From the NCBI RefSeq assembly GCF_006345805.1, contig NC_043009.1, positions 44,392,001 through 44,456,000 of the forward strand: 64,000 bases of DNA, in the 5' to 3' direction. Both the position numbers and the translations under genes were made by a program. Source of the stretch: Octopus sinensis. Its lineage: Eukaryota. The notes under the pieces were generated by a model. It ran no database searches and was not told the DNA's origin. It was given only the letters and a program-made list of their open reading frames with translations. Shown in pieces: positions 31,944-64,000 of the stretch; the stretch's first letter is position 1; each line of letters begins with the position of its first letter.

Positions 31944-32004
<61 letters not shown>

Positions 32005-32150: not shown

Positions 32151-32260
32151 ATATATATACTTATGTAGATACGTATATGTACGTACATATGATTGTGCAT
32201 AGGCGTGTGAGTGCAAGGTATGTTTATGAAATAAATGTAATAAATGCTGGTAGATTAATT

Positions 32261-35189: not shown

Positions 35190-35334
35190 CTGTTGTGTCT
35201 GGGGAGAGTCATTTTCTTTTTGTGCCTTATAATGTAACACGCTCACCGGTAAATAAGAAATAAGTGGAAATTTTACCGGTGAGTGTGTTACATTATAAGA
35301 CTCAAAAAGAAAATGACTCTCCCCAGACACAACA

Positions 35335-35335
<1 letters not shown>
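35190..35335. repeat. 146-nt palindrome (about 64-bp arms, 18-nt loop)
   Basis: ctgttgtgtctggggagagtcattttctttt..ttataatgtaacacgctcaccggtaaa / tttaccggtgagtgtgttacattataag..aaaagaaaatgactctccccagacacaacag. Confidence 0.9.
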
Positions 35336-35381
<46 letters not shown>

Positions 35382-35681
35382 CTTAGCTCATACATATGTC
35401 ATCCATATATTACACATACCGGCAAATATGTGTGTTTGTCTCGTAGGTGTATGTATTTGTGTGTATCTGTCTATGGTGGAATATTTTAGGCTATTTCTAG
35501 CTGTGTTGATCACCTCATTAGTTAAATGAGCTTCAAAGTTGTGCATGTTTAGAAGTCAACTTGTGCGAACTAAACAGATTGATTTGACATTCCTTCAGAA
35601 AGCTGCTTTCTTCATTTCTGCTAATAGCCAGAAGTCTCGGTCCTCTATAATGTTTCCATTCACACCTCTGCGGTTTTATAG

Positions 35682-35721
<40 letters not shown>

Positions 35722-35735
35722 ATAAAACGAGACAG

Positions 35736-36019
35736 ATGAGTGACAACCTGGCCACTGGTGGTGGTGTAAAACGCCATACTAATCATATCTGTCGGGCATG
35801 TGGAAGAGAGTGTAATTCGGCAGGAGGACTTAAACGACATGCAAGGGTACATGAAGCCCAGTTACAACTACAGCCGGCTATTATCGGTAAAGGTTTTAGT
35901 TGCCAATTCTGTACAAGACATTGTAGATCTTTAACTGGGCTAAAAAGTCATATTCGATCACAGTACCAGTAACAGTTAAGCTTCGTGCAATGGCCATACT
36001 CGATAACGAGGGGGCAGCC

Positions 36020-36050
<31 letters not shown>
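35736..36050 (+). mobile_element. Probable RTE LINE 3' end: two C2H2-like fingers plus (AAT)n tail
   Basis: ICRACGRECNSAGGLKRHARVH and SCQFCTRHCRSLTGLKSHIRSQ, stop at 35972, about 50-nt 3' UTR, then (aat)n; no zinc-finger linker (TGEKP). Confidence 0.6.
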
Positions 36051-36098
<48 letters not shown>

Positions 36099-36574
36099 GG
36101 AGAGAGAGAGAGACTGTTACTTCATGTTATCCACCTCAGATGGATGAAAGGTGAAGCTTACTCCGACTGATTTTGAACTCAAAATATGAAAAGTCTTTGT
36201 GTTCTGAGATTCAAATCTGGCTGAAATCAACTCTACCTTTCATCCCTCCGGGAACGATAAAAACCAAAGTACCAGTAAAGTGCTGGCAGTCAGTTTATAT
36301 TTCCATAACGTTTGCTAGATGTGGATTGAATATATAATACTGTAATTAAATTCAGCAAGGCGTGTTGAGAAACTCTAACGATCTGCCATTCCACTGTAGG
36401 GTGTATAAGAATTTTTGGTAATGTAGATCTAGCAAATCGCTCAACATAGATATTTAGTAAATAAGGTTGTTTTAACCACCATTTCAACATCCATCCAAAG
36501 AAATTGGCACAGAACCATATCTTGTTAATGTAGAAATTGCGGCTTTACATAATGTATACGTATGATATATGCAT

Positions 36575-36740
36575 GTGCAGGTGTAAGTGTCTGGTAAGAA
36601 GTTTGCTTCCCAACGACATGGTTCCAGGTTCAGTCCCACTGCGTGACCCTTGGGCAAGTGTCTTCTACTATAGCCTCGGGCTGACTAAAGCCTTGTGAGT
36701 GGATTTGGTAGAGGGAAACTGAATGAAGCCCGTCGTGTAT
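36575..36740 (+). mobile_element. CORE-type SINE 5' half
   Basis: Family match. Confidence 0.8.
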
Positions 36741-36989
36741 GTATGTATATATCACATTGTAATGTGAGGATATTGCTACGTAGTTCTTAGAATATGCTGT
36801 TGAAAGATTGCTTATTTGTTAGACTACACTATTTAGGATTTTCAGAGATGTGAGGAGCGTACAATCCCCAAATTGTATTTAACTGTAATGGATTAGCATC
36901 TGTTCAGGAATGAAGTATTTTCTAGCAATGAAGAGCCAGCTCAGCCTGTCATCTTGGTTATGTAAAGACCTTCAGGTTCCATCAAAATA

Positions 36990-37190
36990 TTGTCGGAAAT
37001 AGTAAAGAATTTGAACAGAATGAATGAATATTGTGTTCATTAATGTTGGTTCCTTCGAGATTTGCCATGTTTGAACTTGGGTATTGGTTGAAGGAGTCCG
37101 GACGTGTTAATTGATCGATATTGTAGGATGTTTGAGAGATTTCCGTTTGTGAGAGTTACACAAGCATTGGTGAGAATAGTTCAGGTTACA
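36990..37190 (-). pseudogene. CR1-like LINE 3' end, decayed
   Basis: Minus-strand ...ttctttactatttccgacaa resembles the F...IPD terminus of CR1 ORF2; weak. Confidence 0.35.
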
Positions 37191-37199
37191 TGCGAAGTA

Positions 37200-37410
37200 A
37201 CCTTTTCTACTCTAGGCATAAGGCCCGAAATTTTTTGGGAGGGGGTCAGTCGCTTTGATCGACTCCAGTATGCAACTGGTACTTAATTTATCGACCCCGA
37301 AAGGATGAAAGGCAAAGTCGAACTTGGCGGAATTTGAACTCAGAATGTAGCTACAGACGAAATACCGCTAAGCATTTCGCTCGGCTTGGTAACGTTTTTG
37401 CCAGCTCGCC
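37200..37410 (-). mobile_element. Deu/Nin-type SINE
   Basis: atcgaccccgaaaggatgaaaggcaaagtcgaacttggcggaatttgaactc...ccagctcgcc. Confidence 0.85.
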
Positions 37411-37597
37411 TCCTTCCTCATATTACAATAATGGTATATCTGTCTGGCACTGTTATACATCGATCTCAACCCATTCAATGCATTCTCTTTCTGTTCCCAT
37501 TGTCATTATTGACGCGAACGTCCCTTGGAATCCCTTCACCTTCTTTGCACCAATTACACCCTGTTATCATTAATCTCTGTTCTGAGTCTATCTAGGC

Positions 37598-39960
37598 CAG
37601 GGATGGGGAACCCTTTTGTGCATGGAGGCCACCCTACAATTCATTATCCCTCATAGAGGCCGCATTAAACAAAAATTATTTTTCTTGTATTCAATTATTT
37701 TATCCTCTAAGTAATTTATTAGTAATCTAATAAAAGAAAGACAGGTGTGTAGAAATCGAAAACCTGACTTTTCAAAAATTTTATTTAAGTACTTTTATAC
37801 AAATAATAAGTAAACGAATAATATCGAAAGCATGATACTTTCAAATATTTTATTTAAGTAAGTAGGTACTTTGTATACAAGTAATAAGTAAATGAATAAT
37901 CTTTATATATAAAAGTGAAGTTGTGTGTCTGTCTCCTACGATTTAGATTCCTAACTATTCCCACATTTTGCGGTGCAGTGTAACCAAAAGCAGGTATCTT
38001 ATAGTCGTGATTCATATCGAGCCCTTCTGGGTATTAGCGCGCGTCTACGATGAGTCTACGATTTAAAAAAAAAATTACCATAATTTTTTCCATTTTAATG
38101 CATTTTTTTCGCTATTATATAAGGGAAGTAACTCTCTAAAAATGTCTACGATGAGTCAACGATTTAAAAAAAAATTTACCATAATTTTTTTCCCATTTTG
38201 AATGCATTTTTTTTTGCTATTTTTTGGCTATAACTCTCTAAAAATGCTTATATAGTTATATTCCTTACAAATCCGAGCAACGCCGGGCGATACTGCTAGT
38301 GATCTTATAAAAAAGACAGCTTATGAACATCGAGAATATTACATTTTCAAATATTCAGTTCAGGCATGTAGGTACTTTTTATACAAGTTTTTGACTTCTT
38401 TGAATTTTTTTTTTTTTTTTTTTTTGAGAAATTATTTTGATATCGGGCTCTAAACATAATGGTTCTTAGTTTCCATTGGTCCTCCAAATGCTCATCTTGC
38501 CAATTGCGTTCTCAGCGAATTCTTGATTTGCGTGAAGTACGAGAATGTGGATTCACAACACTATGTTGAAGAAAAGCAGGAAATTAGTCGGCGTGCATGT
38601 TCACGAAGACGAAGATATTCTACCTCACTTTTCGAAATTTCGATGGGATTTCCCCTCTTGTCAAAGAGATTTCAGGATATCATCTTCAGACATTTCAATA
38701 AGTTCCATTTATAACTCTTCGAGAGCCTCTGAAACATCAACAAGGTGAGGCTGAAAAGCAAGTTCCAGAGCGATGTTATGTTTTTCAAAATCGTTGAATC
38801 TTTTATTATATTCTTCTATTAATGAATCTAAAACTGGCTCGTATTCTTCAAAAGAGTCATAGATACCTTCATTTTCACTCATTAATTTCGTAAACTGAGG
38901 AAAGTGTTCTGAAAGTTTTGATTGAACCGAAAGGAACTTGAAAAACGACAATTTTTTTCTAAATGCCCAAATTTTTGGCCACATACCATAAATACATTTA
39001 TTTATGCTTTATAACGAAATGTTTAACTCATTTTGTTTTGACATCACACCACATAAAAATGCAACATCTCTGTAAAAGTTTGGCTCTGGTAAATCACAAT
39101 GTTTTGTTGTTGCTTTCTCTGAAAAAGTCAATTATTTTGCCTTCGTAAAGACAAAATTTTGACCAATACTTGAGTGATAAGGTAAATCCACATTAATTAC
39201 TTCATCATCCATCATCAGCATATTTCGAAATTGACGATGCTTCAGAGCATTTGCCCGAATATAGTTTACTTATAACTTTCTGCAAAGTGTCATTTAAAAC
39301 GACAGATTTTGCTCAGAGATTTTGCTGATGTAAAAACACAATAAAAAGAAATCAGTACATTTGGTTCTTTGGTTACTCTTTTAAGATGTGCAGTAAATCC
39401 TTCATTTTCTTCCATCATAGCTGGAGCATCATCCGTGTACACACCAAATTAGTAAAATTTAGTCCTACTTTATAACAAACATTGTTCTTTGAAGTTGTTA
39501 AAAATATCTAACCCTCGAGTCCTTCCTTTAAGGGTGCCTAAAGCAAATAATTCTTCATATAATTGAAAATCATCAGTTACAACACGAATAAAATACAATA
39601 CTTGTGCTGAATCTGTGGAATCTGTCGATTCATCCGAAGCTACTGAGCAATATACGTTTTCCTTTTGGATTATATTTTTCAATTGCTCTGCTACATTATA
39701 GGCCAATTCATGCTGTCGATTTGTATTAGTCCTTCTTGAAAGAGGCACCTCTTTATATTTGTTAACTTTATCGGGATCTATACATCCTACAACTTCTAAA
39801 ATACATTCCTTTATGAGTTCTGCACCGCTGAGTGGCTTACTTTTTTTTCCAAGCAAATATGCAACTTTATAACTGGCTTCTGTCGTAGCATTCCCTTGAT
39901 GCAACACAAACTGGAAAAATTGTCTTTGCTTTTGTTTTCGTGTTTTCTTAAATTTCTTTC
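37598..39960 (-). mobile_element. 5'-truncated hAT (Charlie/Buster/SPIN, GTF2IRD2-like) transposon with decayed transposase at about 38480-39960
   Basis: TIR cagggatggggaac at 37598 next to atctaggc; transposase motifs ASYKVAYLLGKKSKP..ELIKECI..PLSRRT..DESTDSTDSAQ..FIR..EEL..LKGRTRGLDIF, TD.APAM, CCESTFS; many stops and frameshifts. Confidence 0.9.
37900..38299 (+). mobile_element. Non-autonomous Helitron nested in the hAT element
   Basis: 5' TC (tctttatatataaaag), subterminal hairpin ccgagcaacgccggg, 3' CTAG, inserted between A and T, no TSD, internal dimer of about 100 bp. Confidence 0.9.
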
Positions 39961-40085
39961 TCTCTCTCTCTCTCTCTTCGCCACTGCCCTCACCGTCTTT
40001 ATGCCTACTATTTCTCTCACCCCAGCACGAGGAATAGTAGAAGTGTCATTAAATAGTGAGAGAGGGGGTTTCGCATTATTATATT

Positions 40086-40136
<51 letters not shown>

Positions 40137-40159
40137 ATATATACATACATACATACATA

Positions 40160-40325
40160 CACGACGGGCTTCTTTCAGTTTCCGTCTACCAAATCCACTC
40201 AGAAGACTTTGGTCAGCCCGAGGCTATAGTAGAAGTCACTTGCCCAAGGTGCCACGCAGTGAGACTGAACCCGGAACTATGTGGTTGAGAAACAAGCTTC
40301 TTATCACACAGCCACTCCTGCGCCT
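40160..40325 (-). mobile_element. CORE-type SINE 5' half
   Basis: Reverse match ending cagccactcctgcgcct. Confidence 0.85.
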
Positions 40326-43300
40326 ATGTGTGTGTGTGTTTCCTTTTTTGTCAAATATTTAGTCTGACACATGTATAGGTTTGTAATGGTTTAACAAATA
40401 GGTCAGGACTTAAAAACAAAGTAGAAAATGGCGAATGTTACCTGAATCTGAGTATTGAAGTTCGGAATGTGTCTACAGAATGAGAATGTCTGAGAGTGTG
40501 TTTGTACATTGATAAGGTCTTGAGGGCAGAGTTTAGGAACAGCTGTCTCCTCGAAGTTCCATACCTCATGGGAAATGTCAGAAACGGAAATTTTTGGAAA
40601 AACATTTCCATCGTATGAGAACAACAAATGTAATGTAAAAATGAAGGATAAAAACAAAAGGAAAAAAATACTCTTTTCCTTTCCCATGAGATATGGACTT
40701 TGAGGGACAGTTATTCCAAAACTGTGCCGTCTTCAATTGCAAAGTTTCTCTCGTTTATTTCTGCTTGCACTCCGTTACACTGCTATCACACTAGTTTTCT
40801 GTCTCAATCGGTTAAAGGAGACGAATGAAGAGAGAGATTAATGGGAGACAGCATAATGGATTATCTTGGTGCAGTTATCCATTTTCTTTTGTAATTCTAC
40901 AATACAACATAAAAAAAAAATCCCTTTGTGGTTCGAAGTACGAAGATACCTTCTTTCCCCCTATACTTTTTCTATTGTACAATTTATTTGATCGAACCCA
41001 GAGGGAGAAAAAGCGAAATCACCCCTCATGGGATTTGGATTCGGAATATGAAGCAACGAACACTGTAGATAGTTGTTGTTTAACCCCGGGTCAGTACTGA
41101 TCGAACAGATATACAATCAGACCCTCCAGCCATGCCTATCTTATCTTATTGTAAACCAAGGACTACATTGTCGTAGTTCCGAGTTCGATATCACTATACA
41201 ATATCTTGGACCAGTGTTTGTATTCTACAAGGTATTGACCCGGATTGATCAATACCTTGTAAGTGGTGTTTAGTAAACTGAAAATGCAGAACCCCGTTGT
41301 ATCTACAACTAATAATTCTTATTAATGTAATTTTGCGGTTATTATATTATTAATTATCAGTGTAACTTTGCAGACTTAGATTCCTTCATTTGTTTGTGAA
41401 CAATAATAGTAGAGCAGTCTTCGACTGACTGGAGTCTACAGAGCTCTTGAAGACCATGGAGAAAAATACGGAAAGACTTCCGTCTACTTTAGCAATATAG
41501 CAACCACGTTGTACTAAATCATTTTGAGAAGTAGTTCCGGAAGAGTTTCGCTATACCAAATTCCATTAGTTCTTTACTATGGGACATCTAGTCTCGCAGG
41601 AAAGTTGCACCTTTTCTTGCTCCCTTTTGATAATGGCTTCAAAGTTCCCCCACTAAAAGAACAAAAAAAAAAAAACAATAACAGCAACAACTCATGTTCC
41701 TAAGTCAGTAGACTCGATTTATCTTAATACGATAAGGCAGGGTTTGAAACAGAATCGTTAAGTATCTATTCAACTTTTAACCTGTTTATCAACTTAACCA
41801 TACTCGTTATTTTTTTTTGAATACTCATGTTTTTTTGTTTATAGGTAGGGCAAATGATTAAGTAAACAACTTGCATGAGAGACAACACAAAGACTGTAGC
41901 ATCATCCAATGCACTCCTTATCATTGATCTTAATTAATTATCATCTATGATGATATCGACTTGATTAGACAAGACGAGAAGAATAGATATATCTTTCGAA
42001 AGAAAGTGAATATGAAGAACTAGAAAGAACAAACATTGAGATATGCAATGTTTTGTGACATTTCTGGTATTTATTCTTTACGTTTGCAAATTGCAGTTTA
42101 CGGGAATATCCAAAATAGTTAAAGGATAATTACTCTTTGAACGAGTTGGCTGCTAAAATCATTAGCTTTTTTTTTTACCATCCATTTTAAATGGGAATCA
42201 AAGAAAGAGTGAATATGAGAATTTTTTTTTCTTTAACTTTACAGAGGCTGTCTGTCATCTCACGACTGTAGAGGTTGCTCTAGAATCGCTTCTGTGAGAC
42301 CTTAATGTCGGAATGTTGGTATTTTGATATACAATCCACGAAGTCCATCAACTTTCAGTCACGCATTTAGCTGTTTGGCCTCTCACCTCGCCTCTGCTAA
42401 TTTATTTGTATTTTGATTTCGTTCTGATTCCGTTTTCTTTCATAAATTTTACGTCTGCGCTTCTGTGTGGTATATTTATTTATAAATCATAAATGCCTTT
42501 TAGAAATGAAAGGTGATAAATACCATCACGTTATATACACACCAGAAGTGAATAGTTTTAGCTGTTGTAGGAATTACTTATTTATATATGACATAAATAT
42601 TTAAGTAATCTTTAAGGAATAAAGTGTTTATTTTATCAATGATTTTTATGTTCGCCTTTTATATCGAAAATCCTTAACGCACAACGAGGCGCCCCTAAGC
42701 ACATATGGACTCGGGCTGATCCCTTCAGCCGGTCATTTTTCTGTATATTTACTTACTATTACAAATCAAAGTATATTATTAACAGTAGATCTTAGGTTCA
42801 AAACTACCGTTTTAGCAACGAGGGACTACTCGTTTATATTAACCCCTGCTGGCTGGCACTTTATAAGTCAAGGAAATCGTTTAAGGCGAAACCAACCTCG
42901 GCATCATGATTTAAATTAATAACAACCAATTACCAGCTCTCCACTGGTTTTGCCAATGCCCTGTTATCATTAATATTTTTAGTATTAATAATAAAAACAA
43001 CTTCAGTTTTAATATGAAATATTTCTCCCGTCGTTTTAGTCGTATATAACTTAATACCCTAACTAACCCTAACCCTAAAACATTGAAATGCAATAGGTCG
43101 ATACTTGGGTCATAATTATGGGTGACAATTTCATATAACACAGCTAGAAAAAACTGCCGTTCAAACCGAAAAGATCCATTATTTCTTCTCTTTTCACTGT
43201 CAATTATTTGAATAGCTTTTATTTTGTGGCATGGCAACTCGGGTTACCACACCTTTTCAGCGATTTAGAACGAACAATTCACTGTTTAAAATAATATAGG

Positions 43301-45876
43301 GTAGATTTATGTAAAATGATGCTTGTTCTGTTTCTGAATGGTTTATAACGTGACCGCAGGAAAATTGACGTGCTCAACATTTATGATAAGGCAAATTTTC
43401 ATATAGTTTTATTATTAGGGGAATAAATGTCATATTTAAATGACGGTACACCATGCATAAAAATATGAAATAGTTATATAAAGTGTATTAGTTTCCCATA
43501 GCCTGGATGTGCGTGAGTGAGAGAGAGAGAGAGATCTTTGGTAAAGTGGTCCGTCAGCTATAACTTGCTTAAATAGGGTGTGTTTTCTTCGACGCTTATG
43601 TGGCAAACCCGAATATTGTTGCATAAAATGTCATGTTAAATGATGATAGTTTTAATAAGTGTTTGTAAACAATACGAAATGTGTGAAAGGGAAAGTAATA
43701 AAGTATTGTTAGCTTTTTTTTTTTTCAGTTGGCCTTTCAGTGACGTCTAACTGGAATTAAGGAAAAGTTTTGTAGTTATTTGTCAAAGCTGGGAGACAAT
43801 TGTATTGATAGACTCGGTTTTCACTGACAATTCAGTGTTAAATCACAAGTGTATTAATTACTAACAGCCTGATTAAACAGTCAACAAGGGGCTTCCAAGT
43901 GGTCATTCAATCTGCTAGAAATAACCAAATTTTCATTAAAGTACGTACACTGCTGTCTTAAAGGAGATGGGATATAATGTACTTTACCGTATTTGTTCTG
44001 ATATAATAACGCTTTGAGTTCAACTTCGTCTTTCATCTTTAAGGGGTCGATTTAAAAAAATGTACCAATCTAGGACGGTAGTTTGAAATTTTTTTTAGAT
44101 AATGCCTTGTGGTATTTGTTCCGGTACTTTGTGTTCTGACAGCAATGTCTGTGATAATACTGGTGCCAAGCTTTATTGTCCTGAGTTAGCAAACTTTGGA
44201 TGTGGCATGGCTAGAAAGACTGTTATGTAATTGGCAACTGCCAGTCTTTCTCTAAAATGCCTTACCCAAGCCTGCACATAGCGAGCATTTGCATGGTCAA
44301 CATTGATGAACGAAGAAGGCCCTACAATCCTGAATATATTGTGTCTAAAAAGATGAGATGGTCAAGACTAAAACATCTTTGATTATAGGTCTACTGTATG
44401 AAAGCTGACCTGAGCTAAGCAATAACACAGATTATTTCAATATTTTTTTATAACAGAAGATAGGGTGCTTGCCAAAAATGAATACAGATGAGAGAAAGAA
44501 ACAAGAGAGCATGAAGGGAAAAACAGTGGTTTGGGTGAAAGTGTGGAAGGAGAAGGAGAAATGGAAGACAATACTAAATAGTGGTTAATGGCAAAAGATA
44601 ATGGAGTAGAGGCACTAATATCTACTACATGTTTTGATAGTAAGAGACAGTGAGTGATGGATAGTCATAAAAACAGTCTATAGTAAAAGAGTATGATAAA
44701 TGTCAGTAACATGTCATCTGAAGTCGAGGAAGTGGTGGCTGGCTATGAAGGAGAGTAAATGGAATGGTAAATTGTGTAGTAATAGATCCGGTGTAATCTT
44801 TCATTATTTTGGATCAATATATGATATGATTGGACTTTTAAATTGTAGGAATAATTTTCTGTTGGGCTTCTTCACAGTTTCTATCTACCAGTTTTATTCA
44901 CAAAACTTGTGCTGACAGACCCAAGACTATGGTAAAAGATACTTCTCAAGATGGCATACAGTAGGATTAAACTTGCTACTTTGTAATTTCTTAATCATTC
45001 AGCCATGCTGTTGAACATATACTCTATCAATATCATCAGAATATCACTAGTCTTGGAGGACTTGCACTTGTCATGGGCACCAACCCCTTATTTCCCCACC
45101 TCAAAGGACTTATTATGGGCATTAACTTTTCTTCTTGTCTCAAAGGATTTGTGCTCATCACAGGCACTGGACCCCTTTCTTCCTACCCTTCAAGACCAGT
45201 ACTCTTCACAGATACTAACCTCTTCCTTCCTGTCTGAACCATTTACTCTTTAGCATCCTAATTGCTTATTTATTCACAAAGTTTTGAATTAATCATGCAC
45301 TATCTTATAGCTTTGAGATTTTGATGATGTGATTTTTTCAGTTTAGAATGATATTGAGGGCAGTAGTGAGAGCCTGGATCTTGCAAGTTTGAACATAAAG
45401 CAGAATATTTGAGCAAAAAATGGTTTTGTGTCGCTAGTGTAACTTAATGAATCAATGCATATAAATCAATAAAATAAGTACTGGAAAAGGTGGGTTCTAC
45501 ATCATCAACAGAATCCTTTGATGCTGTTCCTCGATATGGTTTTGGCTTCACAATTGAGAACTTGTAAAAGAATTTTTCTTCTTCATTCTAAAATGCAGCT
45601 GGTCAGATTGTCCTAAAGTTTGACACAAACTTACCTGTCAACAGCAATAGTGTAAGAAAAGATAAACTAGATGGACTCCTCAATAATTTCACTTTACAAT
45701 TTATGTCATCATAAAATTTAGCAAATTTCAATGTGAAAAAGACTTATGAAGTTTTAGCGAAGCCTTCAAGGGAAAGAGAAAGAGCAAACATATTCAAACA
45801 CATGCACACTCTCAAACATGCTCACAAGCACACAGTCTCACACACACACACACACATACACACACACATGCTCACA

Positions 45877-50679: not shown

Positions 50680-50709
50680 TGTATGTATGTATGTATATAT
50701 ATATAAAGC

Positions 50710-50935
50710 ACCAACCAATCGTGGCTGTTTGCCAACCTCCTCTGGCCCCTGTGCCGGTGGCACGTAAAAAGCACCCACTACACTCACGGAGTGGTTGGTG
50801 TTAGGAAGGGCATCCAGCTGTAGAAACACTGCCAGATCGGACTGGAGCCTGGCACAGCCTCCTGGCTTCCCAGACCCCGGTCGAACCATCCAACCCATAC
50901 TAGCATGGAAAATGAACGTTAAACGATGATGATAT
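50710..50935 (+). mobile_element. Meta-type SINE with RTE tail inserted in (TA)n
   Basis: ggttggtgttaggaagggcatccagctgtagaaac...aacccatactagcatggaaaatgaacgttaaacgatgatga. Confidence 0.85.
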
Positions 50936-54835: not shown

Positions 54836-55604
54836 TCTTGCAGCCAGCTCCCTGCTTCCGTTATCTCTCTAACAATTGTTTTACTCATGGTGGCATCATT
54901 GTATGGACTTGTCTGCAATATTACTTTGTCATTTGTTTTTCCTTTTGCTAAACTCGCTTTCATGGAACCAAGAACCCCCCCAAAAAAAATCCTTTCTCTG
55001 GGGAATGGAATTCTCATGCCCCCCCCCCCCCCACTCTCTTCCATATCTTCCTCTTTGCATTTCGCGGCTTCCTCACTCACACTCAGCCTGTGCCTCTCTT
55101 CTTCCCTCCTCCCTTTTCCTCTTCCTCCCTCTCCTACACAGATCTGCTCATCCTCCCTCCCCTTCTCCTCCTCCCCAGCCGTATCAACCATGCCTGTTTG
55201 TTACCTTCTTGCCCCCCTGCCTCCCCTCCTCCTCCTCCTCCTCCCATCATCAGCCATACCAAGAAATATGAATGAAATGAAATCATGTGAAGTGATGGGT
55301 GCGTGCGGTGCTGGTGCCTGCTGGAGTCAACAACAGCAAGGAGGCATTGGGTAATTCTACAATTGGGTCACATTCTATGCATGTCTGCCTTCCTTATTTC
55401 ATTCAGACACGGGGCAACAATGCTCCTCCACTTTCTGCTGTTTTTCAATTTTTTTTCTCTTTTTTGTTCCTTAATTCAGTTATTCAGTTCTGTTTTCTTT
55501 ATTTATTTTCACACACACAAAGTGTGGAGAAATGCATGTGTATAAATATATATGCATATATATGTATATAGATGTATACATGTGTGTGTGTATATATATA
55601 TATA

Positions 55605-55825
55605 TCTATTTCTTTACTACCCGCAAGGGACTAAACACAGAGAGGACAAACAATGACAGACAAACGGATTAAGCCGATTATATCGACCCCAGTGCGTAAC
55701 TGGTACGTAATTTATCGACCCCGAAAGGATGAAAGGCAAAGTCGACCTTGGTGGAATTTGAACTCAGAACGTAAAGGCAGGTGAAATACCGCTAAGCATT
55801 TCGCCCGGCATGCTAACGATTCTGC

Positions 55826-55828
<3 letters not shown>
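55605..55828 (-). mobile_element. Deu/Nin-type SINE, young
   Basis: tatttctttactacccgcaaggg...atcgaccccgaaaggatgaaaggcaaagtcgacc...gctaagcatttcgcccggcatgctaacg. Confidence 0.9.
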
Positions 55829-55857
<29 letters not shown>

Positions 55858-55858
<1 letters not shown>

Positions 55859-56135
55859 CATCATCATCATCATCATCATCATCGTTTAACGTCCGCTTTC
55901 CGCGCTAGCACGGGTTGGACGGTTTGACCGGGTCTGGGAAGCCAGGGGCCGCTCCAGGCTCCAGTCTGAATCTGGCAGAGTTTCTACGGCTGGATGCCCT
56001 TCCTAACGCCAACCACTCCGTGAGTGGATTGGGTGCTTTTTACGTGCCACCTGCACAGGGGCCGGAGGGTCCGGCATCGTCACGATCGGATTCGAGCATT
56101 TTAACGTGTCAGCGGCACGGGGGCAACGAGGTCCG
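55858..56135 (-). mobile_element. Meta-type SINE with RTE tail, CpG-rich variant
   Basis: (cat)n, ccgcgctagcacgg tail hairpin (other copies ccatgctagcatgg), ctacggctggatgcccttcctaacgccaacc core. Confidence 0.85.
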
Positions 56136-56566
56136 GGGTACTTTGGGGATTGGGGTATTTTGGGGATCCGGGGTACTTTGGGGATCCGGGGTACTTAGAA
56201 GGGTAGGGGGGTACTTAGAATGGGTAGGGGGGTAACTTAGAATGGTAGGTGACGAGGCGGGAGGGTACTAAAAGGGGATGGTCGGATTGAGGCAGTGTCA
56301 GGAGGAAGCGTAAGATCGGTGGGCAGTTGATGAGCTATGGCGCTAGCAGCTTGTCTTAAGCATATGAGGAGAAGTGGTAGTGGGAGGAGGAGGAGGGAGT
56401 AGGGCGTACCCAGTGTAGATGAGTAAGGTGTATCCGGTGTGTAGATAGAGAGAACGGGGTATACTGGTATTGGTGGTGGGGGGGTGAGAACAGTGTTCAA
56501 CGGTATTGGTGGTGGGGGTGAGAACAGTGTTCAACGGTATTGGTGGTGGGGGTGGGGGCGGGCGCA
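56135..56566. repeat. G-rich linker with short tandem modules and satellite-like motifs
   Basis: (ggggtactttggggatcc) x2-3, (ggggggtacttagaa(t)gggta) x3, (ggtattggtggtgggggtgagaacagtgttcaac) x2.5. Confidence 0.8.
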
Positions 56567-59500
56567 CCGCCAATGACTGAAAGATGGGAAAAAGATGGGA
56601 TTACGGCTTGAGGCAGCCTGCGGTTAAATATTGTAGAGAGAGAGATAGGAAGATAAATCAAGTTATGGCGAAGGCTTGAAAGTATCTTAAAAAAGGTTAA
56701 ATTTTCGTAACAGTGTATGAATAAACGTATTAACAACGAATAAAAAAATATAGTAAGATAAATTTTTTAAGAACTTGCTGCGGTCATCGAGCGGGAGTTG
56801 AAATTGAAGAAGAAAGTAGTTGAACTGGGAATTTAAATTGCAGAATCGTAATAGTAATAGTAATGGCGGTTTTCAAGTTTTAGCATATGAAGAAGAAGAG
56901 GAGGAAAAAAAAAAGGGGAAAAAGAAGCCCGCCAATGACTGAAAGATGGGAAAAAGAGGATTACGGCTTGAGGCAGCCTGCGGTTAAATATTGTAGAGAG
57001 AGAGATAGGAAGATAAATCAAGTTATGGCGAAGGCTTGAAAGTATCTTAAAAAAGGTTAAATTTTCGTAACAGTGTATGAATAAACGTATTAACAACGAA
57101 TAAAGAAATATAGTAAGATAAATTTTTTAAGAACTTGCTGCGGTCATCGAGCGGGAGTTGAAATAAGAAGAAAGTAGTTGAACTGGGAATTTAAATTGCA
57201 GAATCGTAATAGTAATAGTAATGGCGGTTTTCAAGTTTTAGCATATGAAGAAAAGAGGAGGAAAAAGAAAAAAAAAAAGACCGCCAATGACTGAAAGATG
57301 GGAAAAAGATGGGATTACGGCTTGAGGCAGCCTGCGGTTAAATATTGTAGAGAGAGAGATAGGAAGATAAATCAAGTTATGGCGAAGGCTTGAAAGTATC
57401 TTAAAAAGGTTAAATTTTCGTAACAGTGTATGAATAAACGTATTAACAACGAATAAAAAAAATATAGTAAGATAAATTTTTAAGAACTTGCTGCGGTCAT
57501 CGAGCGGGAGTTGAAATTGAAGAAGAAAGTAGTTGAACTGGGAATTTAAATTGCAGAATCGTAATAGTAATAGTAATGGCGGTTTTCAAGTTTTAGCATA
57601 TGAAGAGAAGAGGAGGAAAAAGAAGACCGCCAATGACTGAAAGATGGGAAAAAGATGGGATTACGGCTTGAGGCAGCCTGCGGTTAATATTTTAGAGAGA
57701 GAGATAGGAAGATAAATCAAGTTATGGCGAAGGCTTGAAAGTATCTTAAAAAAGGTTAAATTTTCGTAACAGTGTATGAATAAACGTATTAACCACGAAT
57801 AAAAAATATAGTAAGATAAATTTTTTAAGAACTTGCTGCGGTCATCGAGCGGGAGTTGAAATTGAAGAAGAAAGTAGTTGAACTGGGAATTTAAATTGCA
57901 GAATCGTAATAGTAATAGTAATGGCGGTTTTCAAGTTTTAGCATATGAAGAAGAAGAGGAGGAAAAAGAAGACCGCCAATGACTGAAAGATGGAAAAAGA
58001 TGGGATTACGGCTTGAGGCAGCCTGCGGTTAAATATTGTAGAGAGAGAGATAGGAAGATAAATCAAGTTATGGCGAAGGCTTGAAAGTATCTTAAAAAAG
58101 GTTAAATTTTCGTAACATGTATGAATAAACGTATTAACAACGAATAAAAAAAAAAAATATAGTAAGATAAATTTTTAAGAACTTGCTGCGGTCATCGAGC
58201 GGGAGTTGAAATTGAAGAAGAAAGTAGTTGAACTGGGAATTTAAATTGCAGAATCGTAATAGTAATAGTAATGGCGGTTTTCAAGTTTTAGCATATGAAG
58301 AAGAAGAGGAGAAAAAGAAGACCGCCAATGACTGAAAGATGGGAAAAGATGGGATTACGGCTTGAGGCAGCCTGCGGTTAAATATTGTAGAGAGAGAGAT
58401 AGGAAGATAAATCAAGTTATGGCGAAGGCTTGAAAGTTATCTTAAAAAAGGTTAAATTTTCGTAACAGTTGTATATAACGTATTAACAACGAATAAAAAA
58501 TATAGTAAGATAAATTTTTTAAGAACTTGCTGCGGTCATCGAGCGGGAGTTGAAATTGAAGAAGAAAGTAGTTGAACTGGGAATTTAAATTGCAGAATCG
58601 TAATAGTAATAGTAATGGCGGTTTTCAAGTTTTAGCATATGAAGAAGAAGAGGAAAAAGAAGACCGCCAATGACTGAAAGATGGGAAAAAGATGGGATTA
58701 CGGCTTGAGGCAGCCTGCGGTTAAATATTGTAGAGAGAGAGATAGGAAGATAAATCAAGTTATGGCGAAGGCTTGAAAGTATCTTAAAAAAGGTTAAATT
58801 TTCGTAACAGTGTATGAATAAACGTATTAACAACGAATAAAAAAATATAGTAAGATAAATTTTTTAAGAACTTGCTGCGGTCATCGAGCGGGAGTTGAAA
58901 TTGAAGAAGAAAGTAGTTGAACTGGGAATTTAAATTGCAGAATCGTAATAGTAATAGTAATGGCGGTTTTCAAGTTTTAGCATATGAAGAAGAAGAGGAG
59001 GAAAAAGAAGACCGCCAATGACTGAAAGATGGGAAAAAGATGGGATTACGGCTTGAGGCAGCCTGCGGTTAAATATTGTAGAGAGAGAGATAGAAGATAA
59101 TCAAGTTATGGCGAAGGCTTGAAAGTATCTTAAAAAAGGTTAATTTTTCGTAACAGTGTATGAATAAACGTATTAACAACGAATAAAAAATATAGTAAGA
59201 TAAATTTTTTAAGAACTTGCTGCGGTCATCGAGCGGGAGTTGAAATTGAAGAGAAAGTAGTTGAACTGGGAATTTAAATTGCAGAATCGTAATAGTAATA
59301 GTAATGGCGGTTTTCAAGTTTTAGCATATGAAGAAGAAGAGGAGGAAAAAGAAGACCGCCAATGACTGAAAGATGGGAAAAAGATGGATTACGGCTTGAG
59401 GCAGCCTGCGGTTAAATATTGTAGAGAGAGAGATAGGAAGATAAATCAAGTTATGGCGAAGGCTTGAAAGTATCTTAAAAAAGGTTAAATTTTCGTAACA

Positions 59501-60917
59501 GTGTATGAATAAACGTATTAACAACGAATAAAAAAAAAAAAAATATAGTAAGATAAATTTTTTAAGAACTTGCTGCGGTCATCGAGCGGGAGTTGAAATT
59601 GAAGAAGAAAGTAGTTGAACTGGGAATTTAAATTGCAGAATCGTAATAGTAATAGTAATGGCGGTTTTCAAGTTTTAGCATATGAAGAAGAAGAGGAGGA
59701 AAAAAGAAGACCGCCAATGACTGAAAGATGGGAAAAAGATGGGATTACGGCTTGAGGCAGCCTGCGGTTAAATATTGTAGAGAGAGAGATAGGAAGATAA
59801 ATCAAGTTATGGCGAAGGCTTGAAAGTATCTTAAAAAAGGTTAAATTTTCGTAACAGTGTATGAATAAACGTATTAACAACGAATAAAAAATATAGTAAG
59901 ATAAATTTTTTAAGAACTTGCTGCGGTCATCGAGCGGGAGTTGAAATTGAAGAAGAAAGTAGTTGAACTGGGAATTTAAATTGCAGAATCGTAATAGTAA
60001 TAGTAATGGCGGTTTTCAAGTTTTAGCATATGAAGAAGAAGAGGAGGAAAAAGAAGACCGCCAATGACTGAAAGATGGGAAAAAGATGGGATTACGGCTT
60101 GAGGCAGCCTGCGGTTAAATATTGTAGAGAGAGAGATAGGAAGATAAATCAAGTTATGGCGAAGGCTTGAAGTATCTTAAAAAAGGTTAAATTTTCGTAA
60201 CAGTGTATGAATAAACGTATTAACAACGAATAAAAAATATAGTAAGATAAATTTTTTAAGAACTTGCTGCGGTCATCGAGCGGGAGTTGAAATTGAAGAA
60301 GAAAGTAGTTGAACTGGGAATTTAAATTGCAGAATCGTAATAGTAATAGTAATGGCGGTTTTCAAGTTTTAGCATATGAAGAAGAAGAGGAGGAAAAAGA
60401 AGACCGCCAATGACTGAAAGATGGGAAAAAGATGGGATTACGGCTTGAGGCAGCCTGCGGTTAAATATTGTAGAGAGAGAGATAGGAAGATAAATCAAGT
60501 TATGGCGAAGGCTTGAAAGTATCTTAAAAAAGGTTAAATTTTCGTAACAGTGGAATAAACGTATTAACAACGAATAAAAAATATAGTAAGATAAATTTTT
60601 TAAGAACTTGCTGCGGTCATCGAGCGGGAGTTGAAATTGAAGAAGAAAGTAGTTGAACTGGGAATTTAAATTGCAGAATCGTAATAGTAATAGTAATGGC
60701 GGTTTTCAAGTTTTAGCATATGAAGAAGAAGAGGAGGAAAAAGAAGACCGCCAATGACTGAAAGATGGGAAAAAGATGGGATTACGGCTTGAGGCAGCCT
60801 GCGGTTAAATATTGTAGAGAGAGAGATAGAAGATAATCAAGTTATGGCGAAGGCTTGAAGTATCTTAAAAAAGGTTAAATTTTCGTAACAGTGTATGAAT
60901 AAACGTATTAACAACGA

Positions 60918-60961
<44 letters not shown>

Positions 60962-62300
60962 GTAAGATAAATTTTTTAAGAACTTGCTGCGGTCATCGAG
61001 CGGGAGTTGAAATTGAAGAAGAAAGTAGTTGAACTGGGAATTTAAATTGCAGAATCGTAATAGTAATAGTAATGGCGGTTTTCAAGTTTTAGCATATGAA
61101 GAAGAAGAGGAGGAAAAGAAGACCGCCAATGACTGAAAGATGGGAAAAAGATGGGATTACGGCTTGAGGCAGCCTGCGGTTAAATATTGTAGAGAGAGAG
61201 ATAGGAAGATAAATCAAGTTATGGCGAAGGCTTGAAAGTATCTTAAAAAAGGTTAAATTTTCGTAACAGTGTATGAATAAACGTATTAACAACGAATAAA
61301 AAATATAGTAAGATAAATTTTTTAAGAACTTGCTGCGGTCATCGAGCGGGAGTTGAAATTGAAGAAGAAAGTAGTTGAACTGGGAATTTAAATTGCAGAA
61401 TCGTAATAGTAATAGTAATGGCGGTTTTCAAGTTTTAGCATATGAAGAAGAAGAGGAGGAAAAAGAAGACCGCCAATGACTGAAAGATGGAAAAAGATGG
61501 GATTACGGCTTGAGGCAGCCTGCGGTTAAATATTGTAGAGAGAGAGATAGGAAGATAAATCAAGTTGGCGAAGGCTTGAAAGTATCTTAAAAAAGGTTAA
61601 ATTTTCGTAACAGTGTATGAATAAACGTATTAACAACGAATAAAAAATATAGTAAGATAAATTTTTTAAGAACTTGCTGCGGTCATCGAGCGGGAGTTGA
61701 AATTGAAGAAGAAAGTAGTTGAACTGGGAATTTAAATTGCAGAATCGTAATATAATAGTAATGGCGGTTTTCAAGTTTTAGCATATGAAGAAGAAGAGGA
61801 GGAAAAAGAAGACCGCCAATGACTGAAAGATGGGAAAAAGATGGGATTACGGCTTGAGGCAGCCTGCGGTTAAATATTGTAGAGAGAGAGATAGGAAGAT
61901 AAATCAAGTTATGGCGAAGGCTTGAAAGTATCTTAAAAAAGGTTAAATTTTCGTAACAGTGTATGAATAAACGTATTAACAACGAATAAAAAATATAGTA
62001 AGATAAATTTTTTAAGAACTTGCTGCGGTCATCGAGCGGGAGTTGAAATTGAAGAAGAAAGTAGTTGAACTGGGAATTTAAATTGCAGAATCGTAATAGT
62101 AATAGTAATGGCGGTTTTCAAGTTTTAGCATATGAAGAAGAAGAGGAGGAAAAAAAGACCGCCAATGACTGAAAGATGGGAAAAGATGGGATTACGGCTT
62201 GAGGCAGCCTGCGGTTAATATTGTAGAGAGAGAGATAGGAAGATAAATCAAGTTATGGCGAAGGCTTGAAAGTATCTTAAAAAAGTTAAATTTTCGTAAC
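56567..62300. repeat. 347-bp satellite array: 16 full copies plus a 142-bp partial copy
   Basis: ccgccaatgactgaaagatggg starts at 56567, 56929, 57281, 57627, 57973, 58322, 58664, 59012, 59356, 59711, 60058, 60404, 60748, 61123, 61470, 61813 and 62159; copies differ almost only by homopolymer indels. Confidence 0.98.
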
Positions 62301-62779
62301 ATTCATGCACATGTGTATGTGTGTATATAAGTGTATGTATATGTTTGTATATGTATACATATGTGTATATATCTGTGTGGCTGTGTAGTTGCTTGCTTCC
62401 TGATCACATAGTTTCAAGTTCAGTCCCACTGCATGGCAACTTGGGCAAGTGTCTTCTTCGAGAGTCCTGGGTTGACCAATGCATCATAAGTGGATTCGGT
62501 CTGTGGGAATTGAAAGTAACCTACTCTGTGCGTGTGTGTGTGTATTGCATGTTGTGTTACATATCAGGACAGAAGATAACAGGTACATACAACTCATGCT
62601 CTGTTGAACTTCATCCTTAAACTCCAACTTGGAACTTCAACTATTAAGTGCAGGGATGTTATAGCTACCTAAACGAAGATTGGTCATAAGCAGTGTTTTC
62701 ACTGAACTGCTACTATAATCGTTATGAACATTCCTCACCTGTGGTGTATTGATCTTTTTGTTATTTAAATTTTCTCTTT

Positions 62780-63152
62780 ACTCGTTTACTTGTTTCAGTC
62801 ATTTGACTGTGGCCATGCTGGAGCACCGCCTTTAGTCGAGCAAATCGACCCCATGACATATTCCTTGTAAGCCTAGTACTTATTCTATTGGTCTCTTTTG
62901 CCGAACCGCTAAGTTACAGAGACGTAAACACACCAGCATCGGTTGTCAAGTGATGTTGGGGGCGACAAACACAGACATACAAACACATATATATACGACG
63001 ATCTTCTTTCAGTTTCCGTCTACCAAATCCACTCACAAGGCTTTGGTCAGCCTGAGGCTATAGTAGAAGACACTTGCCCAAGGTGCCACGCAGTGGGACT
63101 GAACCCGGAACCATGTGATTGGTAAGCAAGCTACTTACCACACAGCCACTCC
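62780..63152 (-). mobile_element. CORE-type SINE, full length; degraded + copy at 62375-62510
   Basis: Reverse family match. Confidence 0.9.
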
Positions 63153-63411
63153 ACCTTTAAGTTGTATAAATAAATGTCTTATTCTGATTTGATACCACTT
63201 GTCTACTTGTTTGCTCTGTTAATATATATGTGTGTGTGTGTGTGTGTGTCCTTATCTTGATAACATGTGACAGTTGTAAATGAGTGTCATTGTTGTACAT
63301 GCAGGATCATTTATTTCCAGTATTCTGTGAGAGCGTGTCTGGCCGTGAGGAAAATATTAATTCTCTGTCTCGATTTATCTCTAGTAAAAAGAGGCAAAGG
63401 TTACCTTCTCC

Positions 63412-63660
63412 ATCATCATCGTTTAGCGTCCGCTTTCCATGCTAGCATGGGTTGGACGGTTCAACTGGGGTCTGGGAAGCCAGAAGGCTGCACCAGGCCC
63501 AGTCTGATCTGGCAATGTTTCTACGGCTGGATGCCCTTCCTAACGCAAACCACTCCGTGAGTGTAGTAGGTGCCTTTTACGTGCCACCGGCACAGGTGCC
63601 AGACGAGGCTGGCAAACGGCCACGATCGGATGGTGCTTTTTACGTGCCACCGGCACGAGC
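63412..63660 (-). mobile_element. Meta-type SINE with RTE tail
   Basis: Nearly identical to 13335-13635. Confidence 0.9.
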
Positions 63661-63699
63661 CATGCCAATTCATAAGGGCTGGTTTCCATGGCATATAAA

Positions 63700-63890
63700 T
63701 TCCCCACCTGGATAGGGTGCCAGTACATTGTAAGCTTACTCATTTTTATCAGTTGAGTGGACTGGAGCAATGTGAAATTAAGTGTTTTTCTCAAGAACAC
63801 AATGTGCTGCCCGGTCCAGAAATCGAAACCACAATCTTACGACCATGAGTTCAGCACCCTAACCACCAAGCCATATGTGCCTCCACATGT
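63700..63890 (-). mobile_element. tRNA-derived SINE (OK-like) 5' part
   Basis: Reverse complement reads tggcttggtggttagggtg...ggtttcgatttc...gtgttcttgagaaaaacacttaatttcac. Confidence 0.7.
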
Positions 63891-64000
63891 CGATCTCTTT
63901 CTTTCTCTCAACCAGAAATTGAAACTGTATCCCCTTGGTTTGCTGGGAGCTTACCAACACTTTATGGCACTTGCATATGCATGTGTGTGTGTGTGCGCGT

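What the first reader, a model, noticed from the sequence alone, without database searches (positions are those of the whole stretch)
56567..62300. Highly homogeneous 347-bp (about two-nucleosome length) satellite array of 5.7 kb
Seen: 16.4 head-to-tail copies with very few base substitutions. Differences are homopolymer indels, including expansion of one A6 tract to A9, A12, A15 and more than 35 A (about 60919-60957). The plus strand is strongly purine-skewed, CpGs are retained, and motifs recur within the unit (ctgcggt, ggcttga, agttgaa, atggcg, agataaat each twice). It has a sharp left start and ends mid-unit at 62300. I recognised no 5S, snRNA, tRNA or histone gene in the unit. Inference: a young or actively homogenised local satellite, possibly a nucleosome-phasing sequence, piRNA source or small-RNA gene array. 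Many indels may be long-read errors and the true array may be longer.
Basis: partly seen in the sequence, partly recalled or inferred. Interest (0 to 1): 0.7.

Follow-up and report, generated by a model that had tools for sequence, protein, structure and literature searches.

The report
Young 347-bp non-coding tandem array
A real but ordinary stretch of "satellite" DNA: one 347-base non-coding segment copied head-to-tail about 16 times very recently, with no sign of a gene, RNA or mobile element in it.

Summary
Tandem Repeats Finder places the array at 56566-62301 (period 346, 16.4 copies). Splitting it gives 16 full units and one 144-nt partial unit, with a 347-bp consensus. Only 4-6 clean substitutions occur in 5.69 kb. 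The other differences are small, deletion-biased, mostly homopolymer indels, length changes in a purine tract at the unit junction, and one A-tract that runs A6, A7, A8, A12, A14 and A38.

The unit has stops in all frames and no Pfam, Rfam or tRNA match. It has no Pol III boxes, folds no better than shuffled sequence on either strand, and shows no clear 10.5-bp AA/TT phasing. No second copy exists in the 64-kb window, and I found no terminal repeats around it.

The array ends a 6.2-kb purine-rich block (56126-62301). That block starts with 18-, 21- and 34-bp G-rich minisatellites and lies between SINE-like repeats.

Most likely reading: a recent local amplification by slippage or unequal exchange, roughly 0.3 My old or less on a published octopus TE clock, with no product. 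The small-RNA-array idea is not supported. piRNA, nucleosome and centromere ideas could not be tested, because no cephalopod genome DNA was searchable. Interest is low.

The parts
56566..62301 (.). Tandem array of a 347-bp unit: 16 full units plus one 144-nt partial unit. Unit starts are 56566, 56928, 57280, 57626, 57972, 58321, 58663, 59011, 59355, 59710, 60057, 60403, 60747, 61122, 61469, 61812 and 62158. The purine-rich strand is the + strand.
   Evidence: TRF; anchor positions; monomer alignment.
59710..60056 (+). Reference monomer m10, identical to the 347-bp consensus (m14, 61122-61468, is also identical).
   Evidence: Zero differences from the consensus.
60920..60957 (+). A38, the largest expansion of the unit's A6 tract. 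Other expanded copies are A12 at 58146-58157 and A14 at 59530-59543. In every unit the tract directly follows an AATAAA hexamer.
   Evidence: TRF period-1 row; regex table; motif scan.
56889..56927 (+). Pure purine tract at the unit junction. It is 25 nt (GAAGAAGAAGAGGAGGAAAAAGAAG) in 8 of the 16 units and 22-26 nt in six others. It is 39 nt here in unit 1 and 33 nt in unit 2 (57247-57279).
   Evidence: Regex table; alignment.
62158..62301 (+). Last, truncated unit. The array breaks after ...TTTTCGTAACA, about unit position 147.
56126..56565 (+). Unique G-rich, purine-rich leader (45% G, 67% purine) directly left of the array. It holds minisatellites of 18 bp x3.7 (56132-56196), 21 bp x3.0 (56188-56249) and 34 bp x2.6 (56466-56554). 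It also holds the only canonical G-quadruplex motif in the window (56135-56165).
   Evidence: TRF; the repeat finder; composition; G4 scan; no other copy in the window.
55874..56125 (+). Left flank: a full-length copy of a roughly 250-bp dispersed SINE-like repeat. Other copies lie at 63411-63659, 13333-13583 and 50702-50933, at 82-93% identity. It marks where the purine-rich block begins.
   Evidence: blastn against the window.
62302..62522 (+). Right flank: TG/TA-rich microsatellite (62302-62376) followed by a 5' fragment of a second, abundant SINE-like family (62377-62522). More SINE-like copies follow up to the window end.
   Evidence: TRF; blastn against the window.

Best explanation
This is a recently amplified, non-coding tandem array (a young satellite or large-unit VNTR) with no gene product. 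A 347-bp segment at the right end of a purine-rich, slippage-prone block was duplicated in tandem. It was then expanded to at least 16 copies by unequal sister-chromatid exchange or replication slippage, and a single rolling-circle-type burst cannot be excluded. The copies are nearly identical because the amplification is recent, because exchange within the array is still ongoing, or both. The A-tract after the AATAAA hexamer behaves as a nested microsatellite. Most of the 1-3-nt deletions are probably errors of a long-read assembly. The right end was cut mid-unit by a later event, either a deletion or insertion of the microsatellite/SINE cluster. The structure, the homogeneity and the absence of coding or RNA signals are shown. 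The amplification mechanism, the neutrality and the age are inferred.
For: Structure: 16.4 head-to-tail copies.

Homogeneity: only 4-6 substitutions in 5.69 kb. On the octopus TE clock used in PMC13282606 (JC 0.09 = 25 My), about 0.1% corresponds to roughly 0.3 My. The flanking SINE-like copies are 7-18% diverged from their relatives.

No product: stops in all six frames, longest ORFs 82-99 aa (start codon to stop; up to 144 codons stop to stop). No Pfam hit. No protein relative among 5.8 billion clusters. No Rfam family and no tRNA. No Pol III boxes, TATA or CENP-B box. Folding is no better than shuffles on either strand.

Slippage-prone context: the same strand-asymmetric block shows tandem duplication at many scales. 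These are 6-bp x3 and an 11-bp-spaced duplication inside the unit, 18-, 21- and 34-bp minisatellites in the 440-bp leader, then 347 bp x16.4. The unit junction is a 25-nt pure purine tract, longest and most variable in the two left-edge units. The leader holds the window's only G4 motif.

Edge effect: variants concentrate in units 1-6 at the left edge, while units 7, 10-12 and 14 are nearly or fully consensus. This is what exchange-driven homogenisation would give.

Indels as noise: 25 deletions against 2 insertions, 72% in homopolymers. Indel density matches that of an unrelated duplicate despite a roughly 15-fold difference in substitution density.

Base rate: long-period tandem arrays are common in this window (119, 149, 158/307 and 184 bp).
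Against: No genome-wide or cross-species data could be reached, so 'local' and 'neutral' are untested. Other arrays of the family may exist elsewhere, and the unit could be transcribed. CpG observed/expected of 1.47 against a background of 0.50 is unusual for old methylated junk DNA, although a young array simply inherits the content of its progenitor. The non-integer copy number requires an extra event. Only 1.7 kb of right flank lies inside the window, so a larger element that contains the array cannot be excluded. A shared two-deletion variant in units 8 and 13 is unexplained; it could be gene conversion or recurrent error.
Confidence: 0.7

Rival explanations
1. The array belongs to a mobile or dispersed repeat family. 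It could be an internal VNTR of a composite element (SINE + minisatellites + large-unit array), cargo of a Helitron or other DNA transposon, or one of many short arrays of a satellite family seeded by a transposable element.
For: The purine-rich block starts exactly where a complete SINE-like copy ends, at 56125/56126. The window holds a clearly TE-derived tandem array: 184 bp x3.9 at 21657-22367, whose unit also occurs singly at 55602-55826 and elsewhere. The unit contains AATAAA followed 16 nt later by AATAAA plus an A-run, which resembles an old polyadenylated 3' end. From general knowledge, mollusc satellites are often linked to MITE or Helitron elements.
Against: Neither the unit nor the G-rich leader has a second copy in 64 kb. 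No terminal inverted repeats, LTR-like direct repeats or target-site duplications were found around 56126-62301. No transposase or RT ORF is adjacent. The array boundaries do not coincide with the A-tract, as tandem retroposition into poly(A) tails would predict.
Confidence: 0.15
2. The array is a functional RNA source: a tandem array of an undescribed small-RNA gene, a piRNA or siRNA precursor locus, or a repeat-rich lncRNA transcribed from one strand.
For: There is strong strand asymmetry (66% purine) across the leader and array, and CpGs are retained. A CCAAT motif and two AATAAA hexamers sit on the + strand of every unit. Homogeneity could reflect constraint.
Against: There is no Rfam family; the best hit in the array is 21 bits at E = 0.68. 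No tRNA-like gene or Pol III boxes were found. Fold z-scores are -0.62 and -1.01. There is no hairpin beyond 10-13-nt AT-rich arms and no TATA box. Homogeneity extends equally over the whole unit, including low-complexity tracts, as expected from youth rather than from selection on a sub-region.
Confidence: 0.07
3. The array is an assembly artefact. Its copy number, or much of its length, was created or distorted by the long-read assembler, and the real locus has far fewer or far more units.
For: The indel-to-substitution ratio is abnormal: 66 gap openings against 12 mismatches over adjacent pairs. The indels are deletion-biased and mostly homopolymer, which shows this stretch is poorly polished.
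Against: Individual units carry private, non-error-like markers: A12, A14 and A38 tracts, 39- and 33-nt purine tracts, and point substitutions in m2 and m4. Both junctions to unique flanks are clean. Units were therefore resolved individually. A tandem repeat certainly exists; only the count is uncertain.
Confidence: 0.05
4. The array is an outlying piece of a chromosome-structural satellite (centromeric, pericentromeric or subtelomeric) of this cephalopod.
For: The monomer length of about 340 bp is typical of satellites, and the array is highly homogeneous. No cephalopod centromeric satellite is described in the searchable literature, so nothing argues against its identity with one.
Against: The array is only 5.7 kb, embedded in ordinary SINE- and TE-rich DNA on both sides. 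It has no CENP-B-like box or telomeric motif. It shows no higher-order repeat structure. There is no further copy in 64 kb.
Confidence: 0.03

Closest known systems
Macrosatellites / large-unit VNTRs (locus-specific arrays with units of 100 bp or more)
   Same: Unit well over 100 bp. Head-to-tail array of a few kb inside otherwise ordinary DNA. Very high identity between units. Neighbouring G-rich, strand-asymmetric minisatellites.
   Different: Single-locus status and copy-number polymorphism, which define a VNTR, were not testable here. The well-known macrosatellites have kb-sized units, and some contain ORFs; this unit has none.
Classical satellite DNA, including the short euchromatic arrays described in satellitome studies
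   Same: Non-coding, AT-rich (35% GC) monomer about 340 bp long. Tandem arrangement. Homogenised copies, with more variable units at the array edge.
   Different: Genome-wide abundance is unknown. The array here is only 5.7 kb and has no higher-order structure. No sequence match to a catalogued satellite could be sought, because no satellite or repeat library and no cephalopod genome were available. The searchable literature holds no cephalopod satellite catalogue.
Tandem arrays born from or carried by transposable elements (for example the 184-bp array at 21657-22367 in this window, or mollusc MITE/Helitron-associated satellites)
   Same: Sits directly beside a SINE-like element. The unit contains a poly(A)-signal-plus-A-tract relic. 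The same window shows TE-to-tandem-array conversion.
   Different: The unit has no similarity to any dispersed repeat in the window, and no element termini were found.
Tandem small-RNA gene arrays (5S rDNA, snRNA, tRNA clusters)
   Same: Unit length of a few hundred bp and high homogeneity.
   Different: No Rfam or tRNA match, no Pol III boxes, and no stable fold.

Membership tests
Satellite DNA | Head-to-tail tandem arrangement of a monomer, many copies | tested here: met
   16.4 copies, period 346-347.
Satellite DNA | Non-coding monomer | tested here: met
   Stops in all frames; no Pfam hit; no protein relatives.
Satellite DNA | High genomic abundance or long arrays, usually heterochromatic | not testable with these tools
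   No eukaryotic genome collection is available. The array in the window is only 5.7 kb, and no other copy exists in 64 kb.
Macrosatellite / large-unit VNTR | Unit of at least 100 bp in a discrete array | tested here: met
   347-bp unit; discrete array 56566-62301 with unique junctions.
Macrosatellite / large-unit VNTR | Single (or few) locus; copy number polymorphic between individuals | not testable with these tools
   Needs the whole assembly and population reads.
TE-internal or TE-derived tandem array | Element termini (TIR or LTR) and target-site duplication around the block | tested here: inconclusive
   None found, but only 1.7 kb of right flank is in the window.
TE-internal or TE-derived tandem array | Unit homologous to a dispersed repeat | tested here: not met
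   Sensitive blastn of the consensus against the window gives only low-complexity hits with E > 0.2. A genome-wide test was not possible.
Small-RNA gene array (5S, snRNA, tRNA, snoRNA, miRNA) | Match to a covariance model or tRNA detector | tested here: not met
   Rfam E-value mode: the best in-array hit is sR52, 21 bits against a gathering score of 50, E = 0.68. The mir-297 hits lie in the flanking TG/TA microsatellites. ARAGORN found 0 genes.
Small-RNA gene array (5S, snRNA, tRNA, snoRNA, miRNA) | Stable secondary structure; internal Pol III promoter boxes | tested here: not met
   z = -0.62 (+ strand) and -1.01 (- strand); no box A or box B.
piRNA cluster | Dense, often strand-biased piRNA production | not testable with these tools
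   No small-RNA data.
Centromeric satellite | CENP-A association; very long arrays, often with higher-order repeats | tested here: inconclusive
   This is a short array flanked by SINE-rich DNA, with no higher-order structure and no CENP-B-like box. Chromatin data are lacking.
Nucleosome-positioning repeat | AA/TT periodicity of about 10.2-10.5 bp | tested here: inconclusive
   z = 1.96 at 10.0, -0.75 at 10.5, about 2.1 at 10.75-11.0, and 3.1 at 9.0. There is no clear peak.

The most novel reading that the evidence does not exclude
The 347-bp unit is not a one-off. It could be a member of a still undescribed octopod satellite family with a chromosomal or regulatory role, for example the centromeric or pericentromeric repeat, or a strand-specific piRNA or lncRNA source whose CpGs are kept unmethylated. 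In that case this 5.7-kb array would be a recently seeded outlier of the family. Nothing here excludes this, because no cephalopod genome, small-RNA or chromatin data could be consulted.
Probability: 0.06. Interest if true: 0.55.

Novelty: new member of a known kind. Interest (0 to 1): 0.15.

Why it matters
As it stands it matters little. It is one more young tandem array in a genome reported to be 40-66% repeats. Three practical uses remain. First, it flags an under-polished stretch of the assembly with deletion-biased homopolymer errors. Second, it is a likely hypervariable copy-number marker if it proves to be a single locus. Third, cephalopod satellites are essentially uncatalogued in the searchable literature, so the consensus unit is a ready probe for asking whether octopods have dispersed or centromeric satellite families. 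It also illustrates tandem duplication at several scales (6, 11, 18, 21, 34 and 347 bp) within one purine-rich, G4-capable block.

Tried and rejected
1. Protein route to other assemblies. An exact look-up of the 82-aa minus-strand array ORF found nothing. A homology search with the consensus form of that ORF (83 aa, one extra proline) found 1 word-sharing candidate and none that scored.

2. Exact 24-mer scans with two different unit k-mers. All returned 0 hits: JGI metagenomes, IMG/VR, GTDB genomes. These collections hold no cephalopod genome, so the result says only that the unit is not microbial or viral.

3. Leader as a decayed, G-richer copy of the unit. Several patches look alike by eye. 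The best local alignment scores 43, against 35.3 +/- 5.5 (maximum 55) for shuffled flanks. I rejected the idea as unsupported.

4. Dimer or sub-repeat structure of the unit (2 x 173). The repeated k-mers share no common offset. Rejected.

5. Higher-order repeat. The A-tract expansions fall in units 5, 9 and 13, and units 8 and 13 share a two-deletion variant. No other variant follows a 4- or 5-unit period. Rejected.

6. Tandem retroposition into poly(A) tails. The array ends do not coincide with the A-tract. Rejected.

7. TIR, LTR or TSD search around the block. Only microsatellite matches and common SINE copies appeared.

8. Inverted relation between the C/T-rich block at 54950-55300 and the G-rich leader. 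Only (CCT)n/(AGG)n low-complexity matches appeared.

9. Bacterial-type promoter and terminator scans, and the phage, plasmid and E. coli collections, were not used. They are irrelevant to an animal genome.

10. Literature. No cephalopod satDNA catalogue was found. Octopus genome papers only run TRF in bulk.


Full report

Yes. Tandem Repeats Finder reports one array at 56566-62301 with period 346, 16.4 copies and score 9364. It also reports a nested A38 run at 60920-60957. The exact 20-mer CGCCAATGACTGAAAGATGG occurs 17 times, at spacings of 342-375 nt, and nowhere else in the window. Cutting at these anchors and aligning gives a 347-bp consensus. Monomers m10 (59710-60056) and m14 (61122-61468) are identical to it.

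Only 4-6 positions in about 5.69 kb are clean substitutions. They are m2 A>C and A>G, m4 G>T and A>C, m8 A>T, and one inside a complex change in m6. Everything else falls into three classes:
- About 25 small deletions against 2 small insertions, with 18 of the 25 in homopolymer runs.
- Length variation of the pure-purine tract at the unit junction. It is 25 nt in 8 of the 16 units and 22-26 nt in six others, but 39 and 33 nt in the first two units.
- The A-tract after CGAAT, which is A6 in nine units, A7 in m1, m7 and m2 (with one G interrupting it in m2), and A8, A12, A14 and A38 once each.

TRF's '90% matches' is an indel and low-complexity effect, not substitution divergence.

**2. Anatomy and surroundings**

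The unit is 40% A, 9% C, 26% G and 25% T, so 66% purine and 35% GC. It has 12 CpGs, giving an observed/expected ratio of 1.47 against 0.50 for the rest of the window.

It contains micro-duplications: AAAGATGGGA twice, 11 nt apart; GTAATA x3; (GA)5; (GAA)3. It has no half-unit periodicity. On the + strand it carries one CCAAT and two AATAAA hexamers. The second hexamer, 16 nt after the first, runs straight into the expandable A-tract. This looks like the relic of a polyadenylated 3' end inside the progenitor sequence, which is my inference.

The array is the right-hand part of a 6.2-kb purine-rich domain spanning 56126-62301. The first 440 nt (56126-56565) are a unique, 45%-G leader. It holds minisatellites of 18 bp x3.7, 21 bp x3.0 and 34 bp x2.6 and the only canonical G-quadruplex motif in the whole window, at 56135-56165.

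The domain starts exactly where a full-length copy of a roughly 250-bp SINE-like dispersed repeat ends (55874-56125). Other copies lie at 63411-63659, 13333-13583 and 50702-50933, at 82-93% identity. The domain ends against a TG/TA microsatellite (62302-62376) and a fragment of a second, very abundant SINE-like family (62377-62522). More SINE-like copies follow to the window end.

Neither the unit nor the leader has another copy in the 64 kb. No terminal inverted repeats, LTR-like direct repeats or target-site duplications bracket the block. No transposase or RT ORF is adjacent.

**3. What it is not**

- Not coding. All six frames are interrupted, and the longest ORFs are 82-99 aa from start codon to stop (up to 144 codons stop to stop), on the minus strand. 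They have no Pfam match and no relative in the 5.8-billion-cluster protein collection.
- Not a known RNA gene. A permissive Rfam scan of 55000-64000 gives only sub-threshold miRNA-model hits on the flanking TG/TA microsatellites. Inside the array it gives a 21-bit sR52 hit at E = 0.68. ARAGORN finds no tRNA or tmRNA in the window. There are no Pol III A/B boxes, TATA box, CENP-B-like box or telomeric motif.
- Not a structured RNA. The unit folds no better than dinucleotide shuffles on either strand, with z = -0.62 and -1.01. Its inverted repeats are 10-13-nt AT-rich arms.
- No clear nucleosome signal. AA/TT periodicity shows no clear peak near 10.2-10.5 bp.

**4. Are the indels real?**

I used an unrelated young duplicate in the same window as a control. 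This is the foldback-like inverted repeat at about 32.25-32.84 kb and 33.59-34.48 kb. Its best gapped alignment has 20 mismatches and 5 gap openings in 598 nt. Adjacent monomers of the 347-bp array have 12 mismatches and 66 gap openings in 5300 nt.

Indel density is therefore similar in the two (0.84% against 1.25% per aligned base). Substitution density differs about 15-fold (3.3% against 0.23%). A roughly constant indel floor, a strong deletion bias and a homopolymer context fit residual long-read consensus error in repeats that short reads cannot polish. That interpretation rests on general knowledge of sequencing platforms.

The A12, A14 and A38 tracts and the long purine tracts of units 1-2 are too large to be such errors. 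They are probably real slippage products.

**5. Age**

On the calibration used for Octopus vulgaris TEs (Jukes-Cantor 0.09 = 25 My, 0.065 = 18 My; PMC13282606), a divergence from consensus of about 0.07-0.11% corresponds to roughly 0.2-0.3 My. This is an upper bound if some substitutions are errors. It is meaningless as a date if exchange within the array keeps homogenising it. Either way the array is far younger than the SINE-like copies around it.

**6. Most likely mechanism (inferred)**

A purine/pyrimidine-asymmetric, G4- and triplex-capable tract is prone to replication stalling and misalignment. The same block shows tandem duplication at 6, 11, 18, 21, 34 and 347 bp. The 347-bp junction lies in a 25-nt pure purine run.

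I therefore read the array in three steps. First came an initial tandem duplication with breakpoints in or next to purine tracts. Then came expansion by unequal sister-chromatid exchange or slippage, although a single rolling-circle-type burst is not excluded. Units at the left edge escaped homogenisation somewhat, since variants concentrate in units 1-6. The fractional copy number needs a later truncation at the right end, by deletion or by insertion of the microsatellite/SINE cluster. Whether the array resumes beyond 64000 cannot be seen.

I assign no product and no function, at confidence 0.7.

**7. Rivals**

- A TE-borne or dispersed-family array (0.15). This is favoured by the SINE adjacency, by the poly(A)-like relic and by the TE-derived 184-bp array elsewhere in the window. 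It is disfavoured by the lack of termini and of any second copy.
- A functional RNA, piRNA or lncRNA source (0.07). Strand asymmetry, retained CpGs and the CCAAT/AATAAA motifs hint at it, but every RNA test run here was negative.
- An assembly artefact in copy number (0.05). Unit-specific markers argue that the units were resolved individually.
- An outlier of a structural or centromeric satellite (0.03).

**8. Comparison with known kinds**

By definition it is closest to a large-unit VNTR or macrosatellite, or to a short euchromatic satellite array. It meets the tandem, unit-size and non-coding criteria. The abundance, single-locus and polymorphism criteria could not be tested. It fails the tests for small-RNA gene arrays.

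I could not compare it with catalogued satellites. No repeat library or cephalopod genome is among the tools. The searchable literature contains no cephalopod satellite catalogue, and octopus genome papers report TRF output only in bulk.

**9. Source organism**

A hAT/FAM200-like ORF at 39470-39907 (minus strand) has as its best named relative an uncharacterised Octopus sinensis protein, at 77% identity.

**10. Verdict**

The array is real, very homogeneous and young. It is also non-coding, non-RNA-like and embedded in ordinary repeat-rich DNA. It is an uncatalogued member of a familiar class, so interest is low (0.15). The only route to higher interest is a genome-wide, small-RNA or chromatin result that I could not obtain.

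Noticed in passing
window 32251-32839 and 33589-34484: A long inverted repeat with arms 98-99% complementary over 92-185-nt gapless stretches and about 750 nt between the arms. The arms are themselves built of tandem subrepeats of about 150 bp (149 bp x2.8; 158/307 bp x4.7/2.4). This is a foldback-type element or a young palindrome. It is CpG-rich (GCGCGCTCGCG) with long A/T runs.
   Followed up: partly
window 21657-22367: A 184-bp x3.9 tandem array (93% matches, no indels). Its unit is a dispersed SINE-like repeat also present singly at 55602-55826, 1402-1625, 37258-37402 and 7009-7148. It is an example of TE-to-tandem-array conversion in the same window.
   Followed up: partly
window 56126-56565: A G-rich (45% G) unique leader holding three different minisatellites (18, 21 and 34 bp) and the only canonical G-quadruplex motif of the 64-kb window (56135-56165). 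It lies directly between a SINE-like copy and the 347-bp array.
   Followed up: yes
window 54950-55300: A C/T-rich low-complexity block ((CCT)n-like, C14 run) on the + strand, with skew opposite to the array 1 kb downstream. Only low-complexity complementarity to the G-rich leader was found.
   Followed up: partly
window 38900-39907 (- strand): Fragments of a hAT/FAM200-like (ZBED-type) transposase ORF. The best named relative is Octopus sinensis LOC115216280, at 77% identity over 90% of the 145-aa ORF. There was no Pfam hit at E <= 0.01 in my scan, although the relatives carry PF27073 and PF14291.
   Followed up: partly
window about 600-1700: Retrotransposon-tail-like ORFs. One is a PHD-finger ORF (Pfam PF00628, E = 1e-5). 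A neighbouring ORF (…YGHVLRMD…) resembles the C-terminal part of LINE reverse-transcriptase proteins; this resemblance is from memory and was not tested.
   Followed up: no
window 8173-8592: A 38-bp x11 minisatellite (82% matches) with unit AGGGCAGTGAAATAAAGTGACCCCAGTACTTGACCAGT. It shares the 'GACCCCAGT..ACTT' motif seen in the SINE-like repeats.
   Followed up: no
window 59011-59354 (m8) and 60747-61121 (m13): Two units five repeats apart share the same pair of 1-nt deletions (ATAGGAAGATAAATC becomes ATAGAAGATAATC). No other variant follows a 5-unit period. The cause could be gene conversion between units or recurrent consensus error.
   Followed up: partly
window 24001-44000: CpG observed/expected is 0.76-1.02 across this 20-kb stretch, against 0.23-0.54 in most of the rest of the window. 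This is a regional difference in CpG depletion, possibly reflecting methylation state.
   Followed up: no
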